A stretch of 63,324 nucleotides of DNA, filler included, from Octopus bimaculoides (taxonomy: Eukaryota), in NCBI RefSeq assembly GCF_001194135.2. It is 8 parts of 8 records of this genome, joined end to end, with 100 filler letters (N's around TTAATTAATTAA, not from the genome) between each part and the next. Parts side by side here need not be neighbours in the genome. Positions count along the whole stretch, not along the records: positions 47,236 to 61,069 come from NC_068997.1; 7 more parts are not named here. One strand, written 5' to 3'. Below, in pieces: positions 5,137-61,349 of this stretch. Positions within the stretch are counted from its first letter, which is position 1. Each line of letters starts with the position of its first letter. Under the pieces are notes generated by a model that saw only the letters and a list, made by a program, of their open reading frames with translations, was not told the DNA's origin and did not search any database. Position numbers and translations under genes: made by a program.

Positions 5137-6232
5137 ATTATTATTATCATTTTCCGATTGAATTGCATTTTCTTTCATCTTCTGACCGTATCTCAACTAG
5201 AGACCTAAGGCACGTACCCACATTCCTGAGAATGTGGGTGCTTGCTGTCAATACAAGTTTTTGAGTCTCGTAAATTGTTGGTTTCCCAAGGATCTGGTCA
5301 AAAATTTGTCAGTACCTTTCTTGATCATTCCTAGGACACCTACAACATCGGGAATGGTTTTGGTTTTTAATTGCCACATCCTAGATATCTCAATCTCAAG
5401 GTCCCCTTATTTCGGTAGTTTTTCGAATTCCTTCGCTTAGATATTTCTATCAGTTAGTACTTTCATGTTAATTAACAGGCATGGTTTTCGTTTTAGGTAT
5501 TTGATGATGCTGTCTGGTCTGTTAGTATTTATTTGCCTGTCTGTATGTCTTCCATAATCCAAATAGGATGGTAACTTGTACGGAAGTATGGGGGAGTTAG
5601 ATAAGTAGGTAGATTAAGCATTCTGATCGTGGTAATTACGCCCTAACATAACTGGACATTTAACACAATGTATTGAAAGCTTAATGCCTATTTAAATAGA
5701 TGGCTCTGGATGGTGTTCATACCAGTTCTTAGGCTGCGGATACCATAGTGTCGGCATATTATCCAGTGCAAGTATTGGTCAACTCGATCATGCCTGGAGG
5801 GAAAAAGACTGAGCAACCGAAAATAATGTGATTAATAGTCTCGAGTTTGTCATTCCAGAATCTACACTTTGTGTCTACTTCATTGTGTGTGGCATTAGTT
5901 TGAGGCGACTCTGGTCTTGTGCTGCTAGGATGAATCCTTCTGTTTCGGCTTTCACACCAACACTAAGAAGTTCAGCTCAGTATTCAGGACCATTCTGACA
6001 CATCTATAATACTCTTTCTTGATCTTCTATTTCATTGATCCGGGTTGAATCCCTTCCTTTCGTGTATCCAAAGATACTTAAAGAAGCCTTCTTGATCCAG
6101 GTCCTTGATGATCAAATTGGGCTGTGGTATCAGATGTCAGTTTACCACGTTAGAATGAAATGAAGCTTTTGCACACTTGTCAAGGCCAAATTCAATATTG
6201 ACGACCTGCTTGTAATAGTAACCAAACTACTC
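5137..6232 (-). mobile_element. 5'-truncated, internally deleted R4/Dong-like LINE with (TAA)n tail
   Basis: Minus-strand peptides EFGLDKCAK (RT), KAETEGFILAAQDQS, KCRF.NDKLETINHII.GCS, RHDRV.QYLHWIIC..YG, KNWYEHHPE, NRPD..I...K...CLLIN, DLEIEISRMWQLKT (RLE endonuclease). Ends in an ATT/TAA repeat at 5137-5147. Confidence 0.85.
5578..5696. repeat. unclassified repeat, copy 2, inserted within the R4/Dong-like LINE
   Basis: Interrupts the LINE between KNWYEHHPEP and VTIL. Matches 3426-3559. Confidence 0.7.
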
Positions 6233-52865: not shown

Positions 52866-55523
52866 CTAAGAGACGAAACTCCAGAGAAAAGGTACAATAA
52901 TAATAATTAAAAAAAATCTTACCGCGGACTTCAAAATCTCCCACTCCAAATTGTGAGTAGGATGATTATATTCGAAGTAATCAAATGGCAAACACCGTTC
53001 ATTACTTTTCTCGGGATAATGAAGAAAGGGACATTGAAGTAAGACGCAGTTCTTTTGTTGAATGCAATGAGAAGCTGTAGGTTTGGTTTCTTCTTGCGAT
53101 GCGCCATTATATCGAAGAATTGCTTCAAATGTATCACTTTTGTTCAATTCTAGTGTCCTTCCACGGATCCAGTAATTTCCGTTACCGTTATTTGCATTTA
53201 GTATAAAGTCAAATCTCTCACCCGGACTGAGGATGACATAATCAACAGCCATTAGTTTTAGTTCATAACCATCAGAGGCAATGACTACCATCTGGTGACC
53301 ATCAATAGACACTTCACACGGGTACAGGAGCCCTGCAGCGATCACTCTAAAACGATATTCTTTACCCGATTCTACTTCAAAGACAGTCAGCGGGGCCCTA
53401 TTGTGTTTCCCTGATTCATCATAATAGCGACCTCGACCATTCACAAGACCAGATTGGAAGTTTAAAGGACTATATGGTGCTCCATCAAGAGATTTAGAAT
53501 TTTCTATTTTTTTACGATTCCAAGAAACTCCAAATTCTGAATTTAAATGACTCACATCGGAGTTGCAGTTAACTTGCTCTTTCTGTTTCTGTCTGTGGTC
53601 ATAAACTGGTTTTCTGAAGCTGTGACACACAGGCAAGTTATCCGGCATTTCTGGCAAGTGAGCAAAGGATTCGTTAAGAAAAAGGGCCATTCCATTGATG
53701 TTGTGTAATTCAATATGGCAGTGCATGAACCATAAACCAGGATTATCGGCCCGTATTCTCACTACAACGTAAGCACCCGTGGGGACCATAATTGTATCCT
53801 TTTGAGTAGCATTTTCCAACTTCAATCCGGGGATGTTGTCTCCCTCCCAGCTGCTGTTTGACCACGTTGCATTGTTACAATAATTCTTTTTCGGATCACC
53901 TCTGCAATCAATATCTTTAGTATCAGATAATATTTCTCCAGATGTTCGGTTGTATTTTGGAAACCCCATTTTAACTACATAAAATGAATGTCCATGCATG
54001 TGTATGGGGTGGGAGAATCCTTTACCTTTTCCCAAGTTTGTCATTACAATCTGGACAGTATCATTGGTTTCCAAATTTAAAGAATGAGTACAATGGCACA
54101 CTCTATCAACGCCACATTTGGCACTATCGCACAAAGTGTCTATTTCGTTCGGTTGTGTTAAAGGATTTACCGTGGGATCCAGGAATGCTCGACCATTTAT
54201 TGATGCCGGTGAGTTCCCAGGTTCACCAGGGAAGCCAAAATTTAAAAAGTATTCCTGAAACTTTCCTTGTCGAAAAGAAGGTGCATGAGTAGGGTTATAA
54301 GGCTCCAGGTCATCAAATTGTAAACATCGTTTATTAGTTTTCTCGGGATAATAAAGAAAGGGACAGTTAAGTAAGACGCAATTCTTCTGTTGAATGCAAT
54401 CAGAAACTGTGGAGTTAGAATCTTCGTCCGGTGCACCTTTATATCGAAGAATTGCTTCAAATGTATTGTTTTTGTGTATTTGTAGCGTCTTTCCACGGAT
54501 CCAGTAATTTCCGACATCGTTATTTGCCTTCAATATAAAATCAAATCTCTCACCTGGACTGAGGATGAAATAATCAACAGGTGATGGTTTCAGTTCGTGA
54601 CCATCGGCAGCAACGACTACCATCTGGTGACCATCAACAGACACTTCAAACGGGTACAGGATCCCCGCAGCAATCACTCTAAAACGATATTTTTTACCCG
54701 ATTCTACTTCAAAGACAGTCAACGGGGCCCCATTATGCTTCCCTGATTCATTATAATAGCGGCCCCGACCATTTACAAGACCAGACTGAAAGTCAAAAAG
54801 ACTATAATGTGCTCCATCAAGAGATTTGGAATTTCCAATCTTTTTATGATTCCAATAAGCTCCGAATTCTGTACTTAAATAACTCACAAGGGAGTCCCAG
54901 TTATGGTTGTAGTCTGTTATTAACATTACATGCTCTTCCATTTTAGGTTTTGTCTTCTCATGTATTATAAAAGCACCAAATATTCCCGTGGTACGTTGTG
55001 TCCCAAGATGAGAATGGTACCAATAAGTTCCAGTTTGTGCAGTATTAAATTCATATCTGAACGATTGACCTGGTAGAATAGGGCATTGTGTAACCCAAGG
55101 TACGCCATCCATATGAGGTGTTCCTTCTTGACGCAAACCATGCCAATGCATTGTCGTTCCTTCTGAAAATAATTGGTTTTCTACTTCAACGATGATTCTT
55201 TGTCCTTTATAAACTTCTATTGTTGGTCCTGGAACTGTGCCATTAACTGCAATCACCTTCACTGGTTCAAAGAAACCATCCATTGTAATAACTTCATCAG
55301 TTGGTATCGGTTGAGCATCCGTACAATTGACGTCATATCTGTAGAGTTTTCCATTACAGGGTTGTACCAAGGTACGATTAACTAACATAGTTAATTTATA
55401 GGAAATTACCAGCTTAAATTCACACTCGTCGTCTTCCATACGACATGTACGAGAGTAAACTAACGGTGAGAAGAGAGCCAGGAGGAACACAATTACGTGT
55501 TCATAGTTGAACCAGTGAATCAT
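52866..55523 (-). CDS. secreted/membrane-anchored multicopper oxidase (laccase-like), intronless CDS, ~885 aa, with duplicated cupredoxin domain 2
   Basis: Single ORF. First in-frame ATG at 55523, followed by a signal-like VIVFLLALFSPLVYS. Copper motifs HWHG, WYHSH, HPIHMHGH and HCHIELHNINGM are all intact. Hydrophobic C-terminus FFLIIIIVPFLWSFVS*. Confidence 0.93.
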   Translation of the reverse strand: MIHWFNYEHVIVFLLALFSPLVYSRTCRMEDDECEFKLVISYKLTMLVNRTLVQPCNGKLYRYDVNCTDAQPIPTDEVITMDGFFEPVKVIAVNGTVPGPTIEVYKGQRIIVEVENQLFSEGTTMHWHGLRQEGTPHMDGVPWVTQCPILPGQSFRYEFNTAQTGTYWYHSHLGTQRTTGIFGAFIIHEKTKPKMEEHVMLITDYNHNWDSLVSYLSTEFGAYWNHKKIGNSKSLDGAHYSLFDFQSGLVNGRGRYYNESGKHNGAPLTVFEVESGKKYRFRVIAAGILYPFEVSVDGHQMVVVAADGHELKPSPVDYFILSPGERFDFILKANNDVGNYWIRGKTLQIHKNNTFEAILRYKGAPDEDSNSTVSDCIQQKNCVLLNCPFLYYPEKTNKRCLQFDDLEPYNPTHAPSFRQGKFQEYFLNFGFPGEPGNSPASINGRAFLDPTVNPLTQPNEIDTLCDSAKCGVDRVCHCTHSLNLETNDTVQIVMTNLGKGKGFSHPIHMHGHSFYVVKMGFPKYNRTSGEILSDTKDIDCRGDPKKNYCNNATWSNSSWEGDNIPGLKLENATQKDTIMVPTGAYVVVRIRADNPGLWFMHCHIELHNINGMALFLNESFAHLPEMPDNLPVCHSFRKPVYDHRQKQKEQVNCNSDVSHLNSEFGVSWNRKKIENSKSLDGAPYSPLNFQSGLVNGRGRYYDESGKHNRAPLTVFEVESGKEYRFRVIAAGLLYPCEVSIDGHQMVVIASDGYELKLMAVDYVILSPGERFDFILNANNGNGNYWIRGRTLELNKSDTFEAILRYNGASQEETKPTASHCIQQKNCVLLQCPFLHYPEKSNERCLPFDYFEYNHPTHNLEWEILKSAVRFFLIIIIVPFLWSFVS

Positions 55524-55547
55524 AGTTGAACCAGTGAGTGCAGATAT

Positions 55548-55805
55548 CTGAAATAACAAAATATAAATATGAGAAACACTGAAATCATCAAAGACGATGT
55601 GACAATTAAATCATGAAATATTTGTAAGTTTCAAAGATGAAGGAATACCAACATATTAAAGAGAGGAAATGAAAATAAAACTTTGTGTGACAGGTAGACG
55701 GGGGTGAAATCAATATTGTTTTGTTAGTAGGACATTTCTGTAGGAACACCTTTTTATCAGGAACGGTTGGTGACACCGCATCATAAGCTAAAAGTGGGAA
55801 ATTAC
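55548..55805 (-). other. predicted 258-bp 5'-UTR intron of the oxidase gene
   Basis: Minus-strand donor GAG|GTAATT at 55805 and acceptor ttgttatttcAG| at 55548, 24 nt before the ATG. Confidence 0.5.
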
Positions 55806-55944
55806 CTCGTGTATTCCTGACAAAGCAGAAACACCGGTTGAAGTAATTTATTTAGTATGTGTGACTGTGAGATACAGTGTGATCCAGAAGATACTAGTAT
55901 ATTCTTTAACAGGAGCACATGATATTTATTACATAATTTGATTC

Positions 55945-55951
55945 TTTTATA
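55945..55951 (-). promoter_or_regulatory. candidate TATA box (TATAAAA) for the oxidase gene
   Basis: Lies ~140 nt upstream of the predicted donor. It would place the TSS near 55920 and give a ~115-nt exon 1 with no productive ATG. Confidence 0.35.
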
Positions 55952-56771
55952 GAGCTACTTATGCTCACGATTATTTTTGTTGACAAGATATTGTAGGTTA
56001 GAGATACGCCGGAGTGGCTTTGCGCTGATTGTAGATCAAGCCAAATTTGCTGTTGTGTAAAGATATTTACTATTTAGAAGACTGATAAATAAAGATTATA
56101 ACCTTCTAAAATTAGAGTGTTATACAGTTAAGAAATATTTCTTATCACATGAAACATCGCTCAATCCAAGCTGTGTCACCTCTATGAAATCGTTTACTAT
56201 TCCAAAAACTGTGCAATCTCCCTTACATTCGTTGAACACACTAAATAATAATGTAGACCCAGAAGTACTTGATCTTGAAGAAAGACATCTGCAATGTTTA
56301 AATATCGAAAATGCTTTCAAATTTTGGCACAAGTTCAGTCAAACGGGAGAAGACGATTGCATCGACCCAAACAATGATAATAGCGACAGAATTCCATACA
56401 TACATACGCACAAACACACACACACACACACACACANNNNNNNNNNNNNNNNNNNNNNNNNNNNNNNNNNNNNNNNNNNNNNNNNNNNNNNNNNNNNNNN
56501 NNNNNNNNNNNNNNNNNNNNNNNNNNNNNNNNNNNNNNNNNNNNNNNNNNNNNNNNNNNNNNNNNNNNNNNNNNNNNNNNNNNNNNNNNNNNNNNNNNNN
56601 NNNNNNNNNNNNNNNNNNNNNNNNNNNNNNNNNNNNNNNNNNNNNNNNNNNNNNNNNNNNNNNNNNNNNNNNNNNNNNNNNNNNNNNNNNNNNNNNNNNN
56701 NNNNNNNNNNNNNNNNNNNNNNNNNNNNNNNNNNNNNNNNNNNNNNNNNNNNNNNNNNNNNNNNNNNNNNN

Positions 56772-56818
<47 letters not shown>

Positions 56819-56821
56819 CGG

Positions 56822-56861
56822 CCAGAGTTCTTTTGTCACATTTCTGTGACCTCATCAGTGG
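56822..56861 (-). ncRNA. hammerhead copy with G12->A core mutation (probably inactive)
   Basis: Minus strand cca-CTGATGA-g-gtcaca(gaaa)tgtgac-AAAA-g-aa-ctc-tgg. Confidence 0.65.
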
Positions 56862-57531
56862 TCCTTTGCTTTCTTCTTTCTTTTTTGTGTCTTTCCTTAC
56901 TAATGATCAGCCATTTCGTATTCCTATTGTATCATTTGCGCATGCTTATACCATTATGTGTCTATGTTTAGTAAGTGTGTGTCTGGAAGAATGTGCCTAT
57001 ATCATCAGTATCCCCTGTTTATACACGCTCGTTTAATGTTTTTATTTATTTTGTTCATGTGTTTATACTTACTTATTTTTTCTATTCTTTCTTTTTTTGT
57101 ATTTAATTTAATTTAATTTGATTTATTTTGTTAATGTATACAGTTATTTAATTCCATTTGTTTATCTGTGTATTGTATTATATTAACATTGTTATCAGTT
57201 TATGGGTATTTTATTCTGTCATAGGTTGTGGTGTGCTGTGTGTGGGTGCTAGTGTTCCATTCTAGTTTCCTATTCAGGCTAGGTTTATCTTCTATTATGT
57301 TTGTAGCTCCTGTAATTTGTCTAAGCGTTGCGTCTGTTCTATATATGGACAAGATTTTAACTTCTATGTTGTTGAGCGAGCCCTTGTGTTCCTGCTCGGC
57401 GTGCTGGTACAGAACCGATGAGTTTTTCTCTCCCTTAAGTTCCCTCCAATGCTCATTTATCCGCTCTCCTATGCTCCGTGCTGATCATTAGTAAGAAAAG
57501 ACACACAAAAAAGAAAGGAGAAAGCAAAGGA

Positions 57532-57571
57532 CCACTGATGAGGTCACAGAGGTGTGACGAAAGAACTCTGG
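57532..57571 (+). ncRNA. minimal type I hammerhead ribozyme, intact core
   Basis: cca-CTGATGA-g-gtcaca(gagg)tgtgac-GAAA-g-aa-CTC^-tgg. Helix I cca/tgg, 6-bp helix II, A-U and G-C pairs in helix III. Predicted cleavage after 57568. Confidence 0.75.
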
Positions 57572-58228
57572 CCGAAATACGATTAATATAAAATAAAGCT
57601 GTAGCAAATGAACACCAAATATAAAGTGCATGTGGTGATGGATAAATTATCACCATTTTATATCTTTTATTTCGCGCATGCGCATTGTTTGTTTTTGNNN
57701 NNNNNNNNNNNNNNNNNNNNNNNNNNNNNNNNNNNNNNNNNNNNNNNNNNNNNNNNNNNNNNNNNNNNNNNNNNNNNNNNNNNNNNNNNNNNNNNNNNNN
57801 NNNNNNNNNNNNNNNNNNNNNNNNNNNNNNNNNNNNNNNNNNNNNNNNNNNNNNNNNNNNNNNNNNNNNNNNNNNNNNNNNNNNNNNNNNNNNNNNNNNN
57901 NNNNNNNNNNNNNNNNNNNNNNNNNNNNNNNNNNNNNNNNNNNNNNNNNNNNNNNNNNNNNNNNNNNNNNNNNNNNNNNNNNNNNNNNNNNNNNNNNNNN
58001 NNNNNNNNNNNNNNNNNNNNNNNNNNNNNNNNNNNNNNNNNNNNNNNNNNNNNNNNNNNNNNNNNNNNNNNNNNNNNNNNNNNNNNNNNNNNNNNNNNNN
58101 NNNNNNNNNNNNNNNNNNNNNNNNNNNNNNNNNNNNNNNNNNNNNNNNNNNNNNNNNNNNNNNNNNNNNNNNNNNNNNNNNNNNNNNNNNNNNNNNNNNN
58201 NNNNNNNNNNNNNNNNNNNNNNNNNNNN

Positions 58229-58273
<45 letters not shown>

Positions 58274-58324
58274 GAGAGAGAGAGAAATGAGTGTGTGTAC
58301 ATGTATTTATGCATGTGTGTGTTT

Positions 58325-58520
58325 GTGTCTGTTTATCCAGCACCACCACTTGTCAACTGGTATTGGTGTGTTTACGTCCCCTTGATGTAACAGTTCTGCA
58401 AAGGAGACTGATAGAATAAGTACCAGGCTTAGAAAATAAAACTAAAACGATACTGGGGTCAATTTATTTCACTAAAAGTTTATCAAGGCAGTGCCCCAGC
58501 ATAGCCGCAGTCCAAGAAAT
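58325..58520 (+). mobile_element. diverged 3' half of SINE family A
   Basis: ggtgtgtttacgtcccc...gatagaataagtaccaggctt...ggggtcaattt...ccagcatagccgcagtc. Confidence 0.7.
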
Positions 58521-58705
58521 GACAGAAAATACGAATACTCACATTTGTGTGCTTCCTTCTGTTCCATAAATTCCTTAATGGCTGGTGTCTTTCTTATCTC
58601 AGTTTCTATTCCCGATGTACACTAATTATTAGGAGCCGGCCTTTCCGATTGCAGATAGCTTTGAAAATGAATTACGCTTTGGTTATACGCGCTATTTATA
58701 CGTGT

Positions 58706-58857
58706 TATATTAGATTCGTTTGTTTATTTATTTAAAATTACGTGCTATTGTTTTCCCTGCGATCGAATTACACTTCCACTTTTGTTATGCGTCTTCACGA
58801 TCGCAAGTGATAACAACAGCACGTAATTTTAAATAGATAAATAAACGAATATAATAC
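58706..58857. repeat. ~150-nt palindrome with ~60-bp arms
   Basis: attcgtttgtttatttatttaaaattacgtgctattgtt...gcgatcg is the reverse complement of cgatcgc...aacaacagcacgtaattttaaatagataaataaacgaat. Confidence 0.85.
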
Positions 58858-58969
58858 AGAACGGAACATATACAGCGTGATCAGACGAAATGTAGACATA
58901 TCATTATTCAAATAATGCAAATTGATATATCGAATTTAAATATACTCAAATAAAGCCCCGAAAATGTAG

Positions 58970-59655
58970 ATAAGATGATGGGTTTAATTTTCAGTATATC
59001 CACCCTCGGCGGAGATTATCCGCCGGAGTCTCGAAACAACTTGGGAGCAAGTGGTACGAATAGTTTCTTCGGAGATTTCGTTGTGGCATTTTCACAAATG
59101 GTGCTCAAGAGCTCTGAGACTCGTGTGAGAATTAGCACGGGCTTTGCTGTCAGGGATAAACCATATGCCAAAGTCCATCAGACTGATGTCGGAGGAAGAA
59201 ATCTTTCAACCAGAACAACTTGAAGTTCCCTCGACACCATTCTTGGACATTTTTAGTCGCATGAGATATTGCGTTATCTTGTTGAGGAGTTACACTTTCG
59301 TCCCCAATTGTTGCAATAACCCAAGGGACTACTTTATCCTTTAACATGTTGGTTGATTTTTACACCCTCTTCAGTGAAAATTAGAGGGGTCTTCACGCCA
59401 TTTGAAGTCACACCCACCCACACCCTAATGAATGCAGGTTTCTGCCGCCGAAAGGATAATCTTTGTTTGACCGGAATGTCCTCTTTATTTACTGCATACA
59501 TACAATCATTTTGTGGATTGTGGTACATTTGCACGTTTCATCTGTGTACAGTATTGGTGGCTTCGTGCCATCTCAATTTTTGCAGAAGAAGCTTTGCTAT
59601 TTGTAGTCTTTTTCTCTTTGTGGCTTCAGACAAAAGATGTTCTGATATCATGCAA
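58970..59655 (-). mobile_element. maT/DD37D-type Tc1-mariner transposase remnant
   Basis: ILYTDE, HNPQND, RRQKP..I.VWVGVTSNGVKTPLIF.EEGVKINQ, QQDNAISH..K.VQEWC..NF, MDFGIW, AEGGYTE*. The third catalytic residue is D. The 37 spacing is reconstructed across small deletions. Confidence 0.8.
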
Positions 59656-59663
59656 AGAAATAA

Positions 59664-60020
59664 TTGAAGATCTTACAGCGACTACAACAGCAGCAACAAC
59701 AAAATCAACAATTGCTGGAATTAATGTTGAAGAAGTCTGAAAATACTTCACGTTCGTACTCTCCAGACAGCAAAGGAAACTCGATTGAAGAATTCAGTTA
59801 TTATCCAGAAGAAAGGATTACCTTCTCTACATAGTTTCGAAGATACCAAGAGATCGTCAAAGAAGAATTGAAAAACTGGACAAACGCGAATAAAGTAGGA
59901 CTACTTTTAAGAAAGTTATTCCTTGCCGAACACGAAAAATATAGGAATTATATTCTGCCGAAGAAGCCAGGTGAGATTTGTTTCGATGAAACAATTGCTG
60001 GACTTCGCACATCGGCGGCG
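59664..60020 (+). mobile_element. Gypsy (K02A2.6/Mag-like) gag N-terminal remnant
   Basis: SIEEFSYYPEERITFS.*FRRYQEI...KVGLLLRKL...EHEKYRNYILPKKP.EI.FDETI, with one stop. Confidence 0.75.
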
Positions 60021-60063
60021 CCCGCAAGATTTGCGGAGTAATAGAGCTTGAACAAAATGGTGG

Positions 60064-61012
60064 TTGCTCGGAGATGGGGAGCGAAAGGTAAAACCAGTCT
60101 ATAAGCCAACAAAAGTGAACGTGTGGTGACGCAATAGCAGTGGCGATGGTGGTGATAGTCGTGACTAAGATGGTAGGGATAGGGTTAAAGTCATTGATAT
60201 GCATAAGAACATGGGTCTGCAGTCATTACAGACTCTGGTCTAACGACATATGGTGGGGGGAGGGGAAAGGAAACTGCACCTATTTCCAACGTGCAGACTG
60301 GAGCAACATAAAACGAAGTACCTTGCTGAAGGATACTATGCATTGCTCGTACCAGGAAGTGAACCAACAGTCTTATGTTTCAGAGTCCAATTTCTTGACT
60401 TCTCACCCACATGACTTTCATTTAAGCAATACAACTTCCTTATGTGTATCACTCTTGCACAGCGTATGGCAGCATTTCTTCTGACTCCTTGGGTTCGGTG
60501 TCCAATCTAGGGGATAAAATATGTTCCGGCTAAGCACCGGGATCGAAGTAATGGAATTGGACCCGCCCTCTCAAAAAAATTGCTGGCCTTGTGCCTAAAG
60601 GTGAAGTAAAGTGAAACATTTAGAACTGGAAATTTTATCAGACAAATTACTATTGCCTTACATTGGTAATTTATGTTAAGTAATTTCAACTCATTAACAT
60701 AAAAAATTCAAAAAATTTATGAGCAGGAAACTGTCGAATTTAATTTAGACAACCTCAACGCATATCTTCTACTGATAGTGTAACGAATGGAAATAACGAG
60801 TACTTTGCTGCGCATGCCACACCAACTGCTTTATTATTAGAAGCATTGACATAATGATTGCAGACCCATGTTCTTATACCTATCAATGACTTTAACCGTA
60901 CCCACCATCATCACAGTCACCACCACCACCACCACTGCAACTGCGTTCACCGCACGTTCACTTTTGCTAACTTATAGACTGGTTTTACCTTCCGCTACTC
61001 GTCTCCAAGCAA
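60064..61012. repeat. long diverged inverted repeat (arms 60064-60228 and 60852-61012)
   Basis: aaggtaaaaccagtctataag...ggttaaagtcattgata...taagaacatgggtctgca occurs in opposite orientations. Confidence 0.85.
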
Positions 61013-61349
61013 ACATTATCGCTTGATACACACACACACACACACACACACAAATATATATATATATATNNNNNNNNNNNNNNNNNNNNNNNNNNNNNNN
61101 NNNNNNNNNNNNNTTAATTAATTAANNNNNNNNNNNNNNNNNNNNNNNNNNNNNNNNNNNNNNNNNNNNGGTGAAAACAGAGTTGATGGGAAAACAGCTG
61201 AAAGAAATGAAAGATAAAAAGTGAAACAAGAAAATAAATGTATATTGTTCTGAGAGAAGACAGCTATTGAAACAATGGATTGTGTTAAAGACTTAAAGGA
61301 TTGATTTATTGTTTTGTTGAGGAGATGCAAAAGAGACTGAAAAATCATT

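What the first reader, a model, noticed from the sequence alone, without database searches (positions are those of the whole stretch)
52866..54902. Four-domain multicopper oxidase: in-frame duplicate of cupredoxin domain 2 appended after domain 3, then a membrane anchor
Seen: 52952-53570 repeats 54284-54902 (offset 1332 nt). By manual alignment, 149 of 201 residues are identical (~74%), with no indels or stops, many third-position changes and the Cys cluster CIQQKNCVLLxCPF..RC retained. The ORF ends in FFLIIIIVPFLWSFVS* with no cytoplasmic tail. Known: laccases have domains D1-D2-D3, and D2 carries no Cu ligands but helps form the substrate pocket. Some MCOs (Fet3p, hephaestin, GPI-ceruloplasmin, insect MCO1) are membrane-tethered. 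Inference: this is an unusual D1-D2-D3-D2'-TM/GPI architecture kept under selection, with D2' possibly acting as a stalk or a second substrate/partner-binding module.
Basis: partly seen in the sequence, partly recalled or inferred. Interest (0 to 1): 0.82.

Follow-up and report, generated by a model that had tools for sequence, protein, structure and literature searches.

The report
Octopus laccase with duplicated middle domain
One gene in a cluster of Octopus bimaculoides laccase (copper oxidase) genes carries an old in-frame copy of its own middle domain after the catalytic core, but the supposed membrane anchor is just intron sequence, and the insertion in fact put the family's real membrane-anchor exon out of frame.

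Summary
The repeat is real. Window 52953-53570 is an in-frame copy of 54285-54902 (206 codons, 84% nt, 151/206 aa, no indels or stops). The gene is Octopus bimaculoides LOC106881494 isoform X1 (873 aa), already in NCBI and UniProt.

The "membrane anchor" is not real. The ORF reads through a consensus splice donor (GCG|GTAAGA, exon ends at 52923) into a T-rich intron, and two paralogs give the same kind of hydrophobic tail when read through.

Normal octopus laccases are D1-D2-D3, an acidic linker, a phase-1 intron, then a small exon encoding a TM helix. In this gene D2' replaced the linker. The exon now ends in phase 0, so the TM exon (49786-49899, still open in its old frame but diverged to intron-like levels) is read as MQRNNP*.

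D2' is sister to the gene's own D2 (97% bootstrap). The duplication looks older than the O. bimaculoides/O. vulgaris split.

Branch-specific dN/dS is about 1 for D2', 0.2 for resident D2 and 0.30 for the gene's D1-D3. Even so, D2' has no stops or indels, keeps its four Cys, and its changes avoid conserved columns.

Best reading: an active, probably secreted laccase carrying a relaxed but still foldable passenger domain. This is a lineage-specific variant of modest interest.

The parts
55547..55558 (-). The last 11 intron nt, ending in the conserved 3' splice acceptor (tttcag|, AG at 55549-55548), plus the first exon base (55547). Coding exon 1 therefore starts 24 nt 5' of the ATG. The upstream part of the 897-aa ORF (LLFQ...) is intron/5'UTR, not protein.
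   Evidence: The acceptor is conserved in all six paralogues/orthologues aligned. Fused gene models splice into exactly this point.
52923..55523 (-). Coding part of exon 1 of LOC106881494 isoform X1 (867 codons): signal peptide, D1, D2, D3, short linker remnant, D2', and 10 further codons.
   Evidence: 100% match to P0001. The window is identical to GCA_001194135.2 CM046617.1.
55501..55537 (-). Perfect 19-nt x 1.9 tandem repeat over the start codon. It is a 12-nt in-frame microduplication that gives MIHWFNYEH instead of the family's MIHFN.
   Evidence: TRF; alignment with five paralogues/orthologues.
54951..55262 (-). Cupredoxin domain 1 (Pfam Cu-oxidase_3), with the HWHG and WYHSH copper-ligand motifs.
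   Evidence: These His residues fall in invariant alignment columns.
54285..54902 (-). Resident domain 2 segment (repeat copy 1; Pfam Cu-oxidase).
   Evidence: Branch omega about 0.21-0.23.
53676..54113 (-). Cupredoxin domain 3 (Pfam Cu-oxidase_2), with the HPIHMHGH and HCHIELH....M ligand motifs.
53571..53624 (-). Remnant of the post-D3 linker (HSFRKPVYDHRQKQKEQV). Homology with paralogue C ends here, 12 nt before D2' begins.
   Evidence: blastn of gene A against gene C.
52953..53570 (-). D2': an in-frame duplicate of the gene's own domain 2 (repeat copy 2), sitting where paralogues have an acidic low-complexity linker.
   Evidence: Sister to A_D2 with 97% bootstrap. Omega about 1. Predicted cupredoxin fold.
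52923..52952 (-). Ten codons (NLEWEILKSA) between D2' and the donor. Their origin is unclear.
52866..52922 (-). 5' splice site (GT at 52922-52921, GCG|GTAAGA) and the T-rich start of the intron.
   Evidence: Donor score is 7.9 versus 7.8 and 8.2 for the paralogue donors. The region is homologous to paralogue C's donor/intron start. Paralogues give the same kind of tail.
49902..52922 (-). Intron (about 3.0 kb), with blocks homologous to the intron of paralogue C.
49881..49901 (-). Annotated terminal coding segment MQRNNP*. This is the TM exon read in the wrong frame, after the acceptor tttacag|.
49786..49899 (-). Ancestral TM-anchor reading frame of the same exon (AKEQPVKMAVGAVIADVGVLSLLVVVLNLILLTRQKT*). 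It is still open, has the same length and stop position as in paralogue C, but is only 70% nt identical (B-C is 90%). It needs a phase-1 junction.

Best explanation
This is gene A of a tandem cluster of laccase (three-domain multicopper oxidase) genes on Octopus bimaculoides chromosome CM046617.1. The family plan is one large exon (signal peptide, D1, D2, D3, acidic linker), a phase-1 intron of about 1-5 kb (about 1.7 and 2.5 kb in paralogues B and C), and a small exon encoding a type-I TM helix plus a short basic tail. In gene A, a 618-nt copy of its own D2-coding segment was inserted in frame into exon 1 and replaced the linker. This is an intragenic partial duplication, and by synonymous divergence it probably predates the O. 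bimaculoides/O. vulgaris split. Exon 1 now reaches the ancestral donor in phase 0 instead of phase 1. The TM exon is therefore read as MQRNNP*, and its TM frame has drifted to intron-like divergence.

The predicted product is a soluble, secreted laccase: D1-D2-D3-D2' plus a short tail, with no anchor. All copper ligands are intact, and its catalytic body is under the same purifying selection as its paralogues.

D2' carries no copper ligands and evolves about three times faster at the protein level than resident D2, with an average omega near 1. It has nevertheless kept an open frame, its four conserved Cys and its core residues.

Inferred, not shown: D2' is tolerated as a foldable passenger domain. 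Two indirect pressures would keep it that way. First, a nonsense or frameshift mutation inside it would lie far upstream of the last exon junction and would probably trigger nonsense-mediated decay of the whole laccase mRNA. Second, a misfolding C-terminal domain would impair secretion.

For: Identity and annotation:
- The window equals GCA_001194135.2 CM046617.1, and the product equals P0001, LOC106881494 isoform X1.

Family gene plan:
- P0005 maps as aa 1-673 in one exon plus aa 673-710 (TM) in a second exon.
- The donors of paralogues B, C, D and O. vulgaris are all XXX G|GTAAGG or G|GTATGT, phase 1.

D2' replaces the linker:
- Gene A 26-1940 matches C 14-1928. A 1953-2564 matches C's D2. 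Homology resumes at A 2599 = C 2015, the donor, and continues in intron blocks.

Frame and anchor:
- Gene A's donor is in phase 0.
- No phase-1 donor scoring above 3 bits in my simple consensus scan lies between D3 and D2'.
- The TM exon is open only in the phase-1 frame.
- It is 70% identical to C, while B-C is 90%.

Origin of D2':
- (A_D2, A_D2') has 97% bootstrap.
- dS(D2, D2') is 0.345, against 0.149-0.19 for the P0123/P0002 orthologue pair.
- The O. vulgaris and O. sinensis loci fetched have no D2'.

Selection:
- D2' branch: 12 S / 37 N. D2 branch: 21 S / 18 N.
- ML omega for D2' is 0.97 against a background of 0.39, LRT p = 0.015; omega = 1 is not rejected.
- Gene A's own branch for D1-D3 has omega 0.30, with omega = 1 rejected at p about 1e-9.
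- Copper-ligand His/Cys/Met fall in invariant columns.

Residual constraint on D2':
- Only 1 of 35 D2'-specific changes falls in columns at least 90% conserved (9.2 expected, P = 1.2e-4).
- pN/pS is 0.49 in conserved and 0.86 in variable columns.
- P(no stop) is about 0.19. P(no indel) is about 0.013, given 0.088 indels per substitution in homologous intron blocks.

Fold:
- AF2 core pLDDT is 85-98. The best PDB matches are laccases, probability 1.0.
Against: - There is no transcript or read-level evidence here. The splice junctions come from the NCBI model plus consensus and homology, and I could not inspect RNA-seq.
- The assembly is short-read based. N gaps flank the 6.7-kb gap-free contig that holds the gene, so a local misassembly cannot be formally excluded.
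- The ML codon model is my own simple implementation on 206 codons. The parsimony counts are small.
- Gene conversion among paralogues may distort polarisation and dating: dS varies from 0.24 in D1 to 0.64 in D3.
- The TM exon has kept its length, stop position and an open, still hydrophobic frame (mean Kyte-Doolittle 2.55). That would also fit occasional use of the TM frame through an unseen phase-1 splice, or a frame loss later than the duplication.
- The NMD and secretion-quality-control explanation for ORF retention is an inference from general eukaryotic biology and was not tested.
Confidence: 0.7

Rival explanations
1. This is a membrane-tethered (TM or GPI) four-domain MCO, D1-D2-D3-D2'-anchor, in which D2' is maintained by selection as a stalk or as a second substrate- or partner-binding module.
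For: The ORF is open through D2' with no indels. Core residues and the Cys cluster are kept. The paralogues are indeed TM-anchored. The read-through tail is hydrophobic (KD 2.27). A TM-frame ORF persists downstream.
Against: The tail lies 3' of a consensus donor that is homologous to the paralogues' donor, and paralogues give similar tails when read through. The annotated product ends MQRNNP. The TM exon is out of frame and has diverged to intron-like levels. Omega on the D2' branch is about 1.
Confidence: 0.06
2. Assembly artefact. D2' belongs to another, unassembled or collapsed laccase paralogue and was joined to gene A by the short-read assembler.
For: The assembly derives from short reads and has N gaps 145 nt downstream of the TM exon and about 900 nt upstream of the ATG. 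The locus is a cluster of similar paralogues. No independent contig with this ORF was found.
Against: Gene, D2', intron and TM exon all lie in one gap-free stretch, 49736-56436. The two junctions share no repeat that could mislead an assembler. D2 and D2' differ at 16% of positions, so they would not collapse. D2' is sister to gene A's own D2 and not to another known paralogue. Flanking homology to paralogue C is colinear on both sides of the insert. A random chimera would stay in frame and free of stops only by luck.
Confidence: 0.06
3. D2' is neofunctionalised. After duplication its former interdomain surfaces were remodelled under positive selection while the core stayed constrained, giving a new binding or regulatory module on a secreted laccase.
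For: An average omega near 1 combined with strong avoidance of conserved columns implies site heterogeneity. Several hydrophobic-to-polar replacements occurred (W2C, Y8H, Y16S, V130N, Y184H). The domain has persisted for longer than the species split by dS.
Against: pN/pS in variable columns is 0.86, not above 1. No orthologue with D2' is seen in O. vulgaris or O. sinensis. Two new unpaired Cys (W->C, F->C) look more like drift. There are no functional data.
Confidence: 0.13
4. The whole gene is a decaying paralogue, an incipient pseudogene that lost its anchor, and the open frame is only a matter of time.
For: It lost the family's TM anchor. No orthologue was detected in two other Octopus species. 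It carries an odd microduplication at the start codon.
Against: Omega on gene A's own branch for D1-D3 is 0.30, and omega = 1 is rejected at p about 1e-9. All copper ligands and invariant residues are present. An 867-codon exon has no stop.
Confidence: 0.05

Closest known systems
Canonical animal three-domain laccases (mollusc laccase family; insect laccase/MCO; solved example: termite laccase BP76, PDB 8r7i)
   Same: Same D1-D2-D3 order of the Pfam domains Cu-oxidase_3 / Cu-oxidase / Cu-oxidase_2. All copper-ligand motifs are present. Identity is 45-79% to mollusc laccases. The D2' model superposes on the middle domain of 8r7i and of fungal laccases.
   Different: It has an extra, ligand-free copy of the middle domain after D3. 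None of the best 120 plus 150 homologues inspected shows this.
Its own paralogues in the O. bimaculoides cluster (LOC106881493, LOC106882161, LOC106882155, and the downstream gene annotated as LOC106881494 isoform X2) and the O. vulgaris / O. sinensis laccase-like genes
   Same: Two-coding-exon plan, conserved acceptor 5' of the ATG, homologous donor and intron blocks, and 71-79% aa identity.
   Different: Paralogues have an acidic linker and an in-frame TM exon (type-I anchor). Gene A has D2' in place of the linker, a phase-0 junction and therefore no anchor.
C-terminally TM-anchored multicopper oxidases (yeast Fet3p, vertebrate hephaestin); comparison from general knowledge
   Same: The octopus paralogues share the layout of ectodomain plus a single C-terminal TM helix and a short cytoplasmic tail. 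Fet3p (1zpu) appears among the structural matches of D2'.
   Different: Gene A itself does not keep the anchor in frame. No ferroxidase-specific features were examined.
Six-domain MCOs formed by internal duplication (ceruloplasmin, hephaestin, factor V/VIII A domains); comparison from general knowledge
   Same: These are precedents showing that cupredoxin domains in MCOs multiply by intragenic duplication.
   Different: They arose by duplicating whole units that preserve interdomain copper sites. Here a single ligand-free middle domain was appended out of order (D1-D2-D3-D2').

Membership tests
Three-domain multicopper oxidase / laccase | Three cupredoxin domains in the order Cu-oxidase_3, Cu-oxidase, Cu-oxidase_2 | tested here: met
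   Pfam E-values are 4.8e-44, 1.2e-59 (two stretches) and 2.3e-33.
Three-domain multicopper oxidase / laccase | Four copper-ligand motifs (HxHG, HxH in D1; HxxHxH, HCHxxxHxxxxM/L in D3) | tested here: met
   HWHG, WYHSH, HPIHMHGH and HCHIELHNINGM are present in the translation. H126, H128, H170, H172, H505, H508, H510, H601, C602, H603, H607 and M612 fall in invariant columns of a 48-sequence alignment.
Three-domain multicopper oxidase / laccase | Phenol-oxidase (laccase) rather than ferroxidase or ascorbate-oxidase activity | not testable with these tools
   Only source names ('laccase', 'laccase-like') are available. No assay was possible.
Type-I membrane-anchored MCO (as in its paralogues, Fet3p, hephaestin) | A C-terminal hydrophobic helix encoded in frame in the mature mRNA | tested here: not met
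   Exon 1 ends in phase 0, while the TM exon needs phase 1. The spliced product ends MQRNNP*. The paralogues meet this feature.
GPI-anchored MCO (as GPI-ceruloplasmin) | A C-terminal hydrophobic GPI signal peptide in the translated product | tested here: not met
   The hydrophobic tail exists only in the unspliced read-through. The spliced C-terminus ...EILKSAMQRNNP is polar. No GPI predictor was available, and transcripts were not seen.
Intragenic domain duplication (as opposed to fusion with a neighbouring paralogue) | The extra domain is most closely related to the same gene's own domain | tested here: met
   The NJ tree gives (A_D2, A_D2') 97% bootstrap on all positions, 76% on third positions and 93.5% on positions 1+2. 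Later gene conversion between the two copies cannot be excluded.
Pseudogene | Disabling mutations, or neutral evolution of the coding body | tested here: not met
   There are no stops in 867 codons. Omega on gene A's branch for D1-D3 is 0.30, with omega = 1 rejected at p about 1e-9. Only D2' (omega about 1) and the TM exon look relaxed.

The most novel reading that the evidence does not exclude
D2' is not a passenger. It is a remodelled, copper-free cupredoxin module that has been retained since before the O. bimaculoides/O. vulgaris split. On this reading it gives a secreted octopus laccase a new binding or regulatory function, for example substrate or matrix docking or self-association. Loss of the TM anchor would then be part of the same shift from a cell-surface to a soluble enzyme.
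Probability: 0.13. Interest if true: 0.5.

Novelty: new variant of a known kind. Interest (0 to 1): 0.3.

Why it matters
In practical terms, this corrects a misreading. In intron-containing genomes, a hydrophobic ORF tail just after a GTAAGA donor is typically T-rich intron and not a membrane anchor. Here the true anchor is a separate exon that the duplication put out of frame.

In biological terms, it is a clean natural case of an out-of-order domain duplication inside a single exon. One ORF contains a constrained catalytic body (omega 0.30) and an appended copy evolving at omega about 1 that has nevertheless stayed open and foldable. That makes it a possible test case for how indirect pressures, such as NMD avoidance and secretory quality control, preserve "passenger" domains long enough for new functions to arise.

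It also shows that cephalopod laccases of this clade are type-I membrane proteins arranged in tandem clusters, with read-through or chimeric gene models. That is useful for annotation. None of this bears on a long-standing open question, and function is untested.

Tried and rejected
- Searching the 5.8-billion-protein index with the 278-aa D3-end/D2'/tail peptide, to find independent (for example Logan or RNA-seq derived) contigs spanning the junctions. It returned only 5 distant hits and not even P0001 itself, so it says nothing either way.
- Exact look-up of the 885-aa read-through ORF in public assemblies. Nothing was on record.
- Looking for a degenerate D3' after D2', which would indicate fusion of two tandem genes. 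tblastn of the protein against the whole piece found nothing beyond the ORF.
- Looking for an 'isoform X2' that skips D2'. Isoform X2 turned out to be the downstream paralogue B, with a first coding exon inside gene A's TM exon.
- Looking for an alternative phase-1 donor upstream of D2' that could restore the anchor. The scan of GT sites in the last ~800 nt of exon 1 listed none there scoring above 3 bits. Phase-1 GT sites exist only inside D2' (for example exon end at 53222), and they lie in coding motifs that are conserved in the resident D2.
- Longer homologues (P0024, P0065, P0088, P0090, P0122, P0127) as possible four-domain relatives. They are fused tandem-gene models or carry unrelated extensions such as fibrinogen_C or Sushi.
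- Literature searches for cephalopod or mollusc laccase architecture and for four-domain MCOs. They found nothing specific.
- Other ORFs of at least 80 aa in the piece. None had a Pfam hit.
- A full-length AF2 model. I did not run it because the tool returns no interdomain contact or PAE information.
Full report
**What is there**

The piece (window 47236-61069) is identical to Octopus bimaculoides assembly GCA_001194135.2, chromosome CM046617.1. On the minus strand there is an 897-codon ORF, 55559-52866. From the ATG at 55523, its product is 100% identical to NCBI's 'uncharacterized protein LOC106881494 isoform X1' (P0001, 873 aa, XP_014787383.1 / XP_052829984.1, UniProt A0A0L8FS61 'Laccase'), except for the last residues.

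Pfam finds Cu-oxidase_3, Cu-oxidase (two stretches) and Cu-oxidase_2. All copper-ligand residues sit in invariant columns of a 48-sequence alignment.

**The observation**

The repeat is real.
- ORF residues 220-425 (54285-54902) align without gaps to residues 664-869 (52953-53570), with 151/206 aa and 519/618 nt identical.
- There are no stops or indels.
- The boundaries are sharp.
- The four conserved Cys are kept.

**The 'membrane anchor' is intron**

Ten codons after D2', the sequence reads AAG TCC GCG|GTAAGATTTTTTTTAATT. This is a consensus 5' splice site. Its score is 7.9 bits in a simple matrix, against 7.8 and 8.2 for the known donors of two paralogues.

The NCBI model ends ...EILKSA + MQRNNP. 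That short exon lies at 49901-49881, behind the acceptor tttacag|.

Reading through the equivalent donors of the neighbouring paralogues gives the same kind of short hydrophobic tail: GMFYASSFIFFL* in gene B and GKGCFIFIVL* in gene C. So VRFFLIIIIVPFLWSFVS* is a compositional by-product of a T-rich intron start.

**The family plan and what the duplication did**

The close relatives are all about 700-730 aa. They are O. bimaculoides P0004/P0133, P0005, P0123 and P0131, O. vulgaris P0002, O. sinensis P0003 and cuttlefish P0006. Each ends in an acidic or low-complexity linker followed by a TM helix and a short basic tail.

In the genome, the TM helix and tail are a separate small exon. P0005 maps as aa 1-673 and 673-710, about 2.5 kb apart. 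The intron is in phase 1 in B, C, P0123 and O. vulgaris P0002 (...XXX G|GTAAGG or G|GTATGT).

DNA comparison of gene A with gene C shows the following:
- colinear homology A 26-1940 = C 14-1928;
- then A 1953-2564 = C's D2 (612-1223);
- then homology resuming at A 2599 = C 2015, exactly at the donor;
- then homology continuing through intron blocks.

D2' therefore sits in exon 1 in place of the linker.

Gene A still has the TM exon. In the ancestral phase-1 frame it reads AKEQPVKMAVGAVIADVGVLSLLVVVLNLILLTRQKT* (49899-49786). It has the same length and stop position as in gene C.

Exon 1 of gene A, however, reaches the donor in phase 0. The exon is therefore translated as MQRNNP*.

My simple donor scan found no phase-1 GT site scoring above 3 bits between D3 and D2'.

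The TM exon of gene A is only 64-70% identical in nt to those of B and C. B-C, C-P0123 and C-O. vulgaris are 89-90%. That places it at the level of the homologous intron blocks (70-76%). The annotated product thus has no anchor.

**Origin and age**

A neighbour-joining tree of the 618-nt D2 segments puts D2' as sister of gene A's own D2 (97% bootstrap). This pair is sister to the P0123/O. vulgaris P0002 orthologue pair, and B, C and O. sinensis P0003 form the other clade. So this is an intragenic duplication, not a fusion with a neighbour. No D3' remnant follows D2'.

dS(D2, D2') is 0.345. The orthologue pair P0123/P0002 has dS 0.19 in D2 and 0.149 overall. By this clock the duplication predates the O. 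bimaculoides/O. vulgaris split.

No protein more than 79% identical to gene A was found in other species. The two fetched loci from O. vulgaris and O. sinensis have no D2'. However, P0002's true O. bimaculoides orthologue is P0123. Gene A therefore has no detected orthologue.

dS varies strongly along the genes: A versus P0123 gives 0.24 in D1 and 0.64 in D3. This suggests gene conversion in the cluster and makes dates soft.

**Selection**

Pairwise dN/dS between the copies is 0.35-0.46, but that figure hides an asymmetry.
- Polarising differences with four outgroup D2s gives 21 S / 18 N on the resident D2 branch (pN/pS 0.23) and 12 S / 37 N on the D2' branch (0.84).
- A GY94-type branch model that I wrote for this analysis gives omega 0.97 for D2' against a background of 0.39 (LRT p = 0.015).
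- Omega = 1 is not rejected (p = 0.94), and resident D2 is 0.21.
- The same kind of model gives omega 0.30 for D1-D3 on gene A's own branch. This is indistinguishable from the background of 0.35, and omega = 1 is rejected at p about 1e-9.

So the enzyme body is constrained and the gene is not a pseudogene, while the appended copy is relaxed about three-fold.

D2' is still not drifting freely.
- Of 35 D2'-specific replacements, only 1 falls in the 54 columns that are at least 90% conserved among 115 non-octopus homologues (9.2 expected, P = 1.2e-4). Only 5 fall in the 73 columns at least 80% conserved (12.4 expected, P = 0.0025).
- pN/pS on the D2' branch is 0.49 in conserved columns and 0.86 in variable columns.
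- Simulated neutral substitutions leave the frame free of stops about 19% of the time.
- With 0.088 indels per substitution in homologous intron blocks, the chance of no indel is about 1%.

An AlphaFold2 model of the segment has a core pLDDT of 85-98 and a beta-sandwich fold. The linker and the last 14 residues are disordered. Its best PDB matches are the middle domains of laccases: termite BP76 (8r7i) and fungal laccases, probability 1.0.

**Mechanistic reading**

Shown:
- the architecture;
- the intron read-through;
- the frame mismatch with the TM exon;
- the intragenic origin of D2';
- relaxed but non-zero constraint on D2';
- a constrained catalytic body.

Inferred: the product is a secreted, unanchored laccase carrying a foldable passenger domain. 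The open frame would be kept because a premature stop inside D2' would lie more than 50 nt upstream of the last exon junction and would expose the mRNA to nonsense-mediated decay. The core would be kept because a misfolding C-terminal domain would compromise secretion. These are general principles applied here, not tests.

A neofunctionalised D2' remains possible (about 0.13). An assembly chimera is unlikely but cannot be excluded without reads (about 0.06). The reasons it is unlikely:
- the gene lies in one gap-free stretch, 49736-56436;
- the junctions share no repeat;
- flanking homology is colinear.

**Comparison and novelty**

This is a member of the animal three-domain laccase family, with all defining features met. 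It departs from its own TM-anchored paralogues by an out-of-order extra D2 and by loss of the anchor.
- Among the best 120 homologues, only P0001 has a second Cu-oxidase stretch after D3. The longer hits that were scanned or read (P0024, P0065, P0088, P0090, and cluster members P0122, P0127) are fused tandem-gene models or carry unrelated extensions.
- Among the best 150 of 1.84 billion cluster representatives, no match extends colinearly beyond query residue 668.
- I found no paper describing it.
- The protein itself has been in public databases since the 2015 annotation.

I rate it a new variant of a known kind, of modest interest.

Noticed in passing
window 55501-55537 (minus strand, over the ATG at 55523): A perfect 19-nt x 1.9 tandem repeat. 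It is a 12-nt in-frame microduplication (GGTTCAACTATG) unique to gene A. The N-terminus becomes MIHWFNYEHVIV instead of the family's MIHFNVIV, and a second, out-of-frame ATG is created. The effect on the signal peptide is unknown.
   Followed up: partly
window 49852-49878 (minus strand) and L001 15646 onward; proteins P0133, P0127, P0122: NCBI's 'isoform X2' of LOC106881494 (746 aa) is really the downstream paralogue B. Its model starts at an ATG inside gene A's TM exon (MAVGAVIAD), uses an internal donor (GAT|GTTGGT), and splices to the conserved acceptor 24 nt 5' of B's ATG. O. vulgaris models P0127 (1375 aa, two laccases fused) and P0122 (812 aa) join at the same acceptor. This suggests read-through or chimeric transcription along the tandem cluster, or systematic model fusion.
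   Followed up: partly
window 55547-55560; equivalent positions in L002, L003, L004 and L005: All paralogues and orthologues share an acceptor (ttttgttatttcag|ATATCTGCAC) 24 nt upstream of the start codon. The frame is open across ISA(L/H)TGST-M, so the coding exon is preceded by a 5'UTR intron. The first 4 codons of the 897-aa ORF are intron.
   Followed up: partly
L001, L002, L005 (CM046617.1, about 49.06-49.17 Mb): At least four laccase genes lie within about 110 kb: P0123, C/P0005, B/P0133 and A/P0001. B and C are convergent, and A and B are in tandem. dS between paralogues differs about 2.5-fold between D1 and D3, which hints at gene conversion in the 5' half.
   Followed up: partly
window 53565-53567 and 53316-53318 (D2' residues 2 and 85): D2' gained two cysteines absent from every other D2 compared (W->C in NWDS->NCNS, and F->C in LYPFEV->LYPCEV), in addition to the four conserved ones. 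In a secreted protein these would be unpaired or would form a new pair.
   Followed up: no
window 49314-49735, 56437-56771, 57698-58228: Assembly gaps (N runs of 422, 335 and 531 nt), several of them abutted by (TA)n, (AC)n or (AG)n microsatellites. The first gap starts only about 50 nt after the stop of the TM-frame ORF, so the 3' UTR of gene A is incomplete in the assembly.
   Followed up: no
window 49196-49305 vs L001 22529-22639; window 56814-56911 vs 57480-57579 (inverted): Short dispersed repeats of about 100-110 nt at 93% identity, within the locus and near the gaps. They are probably interspersed-element fragments and were not identified.
   Followed up: no
L004 (O. sinensis VCDQ01003116.1), around locus 5353-5408: The O. 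sinensis laccase-like gene P0003 needs a frame change near residue 419 (NCBI flags it 'LOW QUALITY PROTEIN'). This is either a sequencing error or a real frameshift in that paralogue.
   Followed up: no
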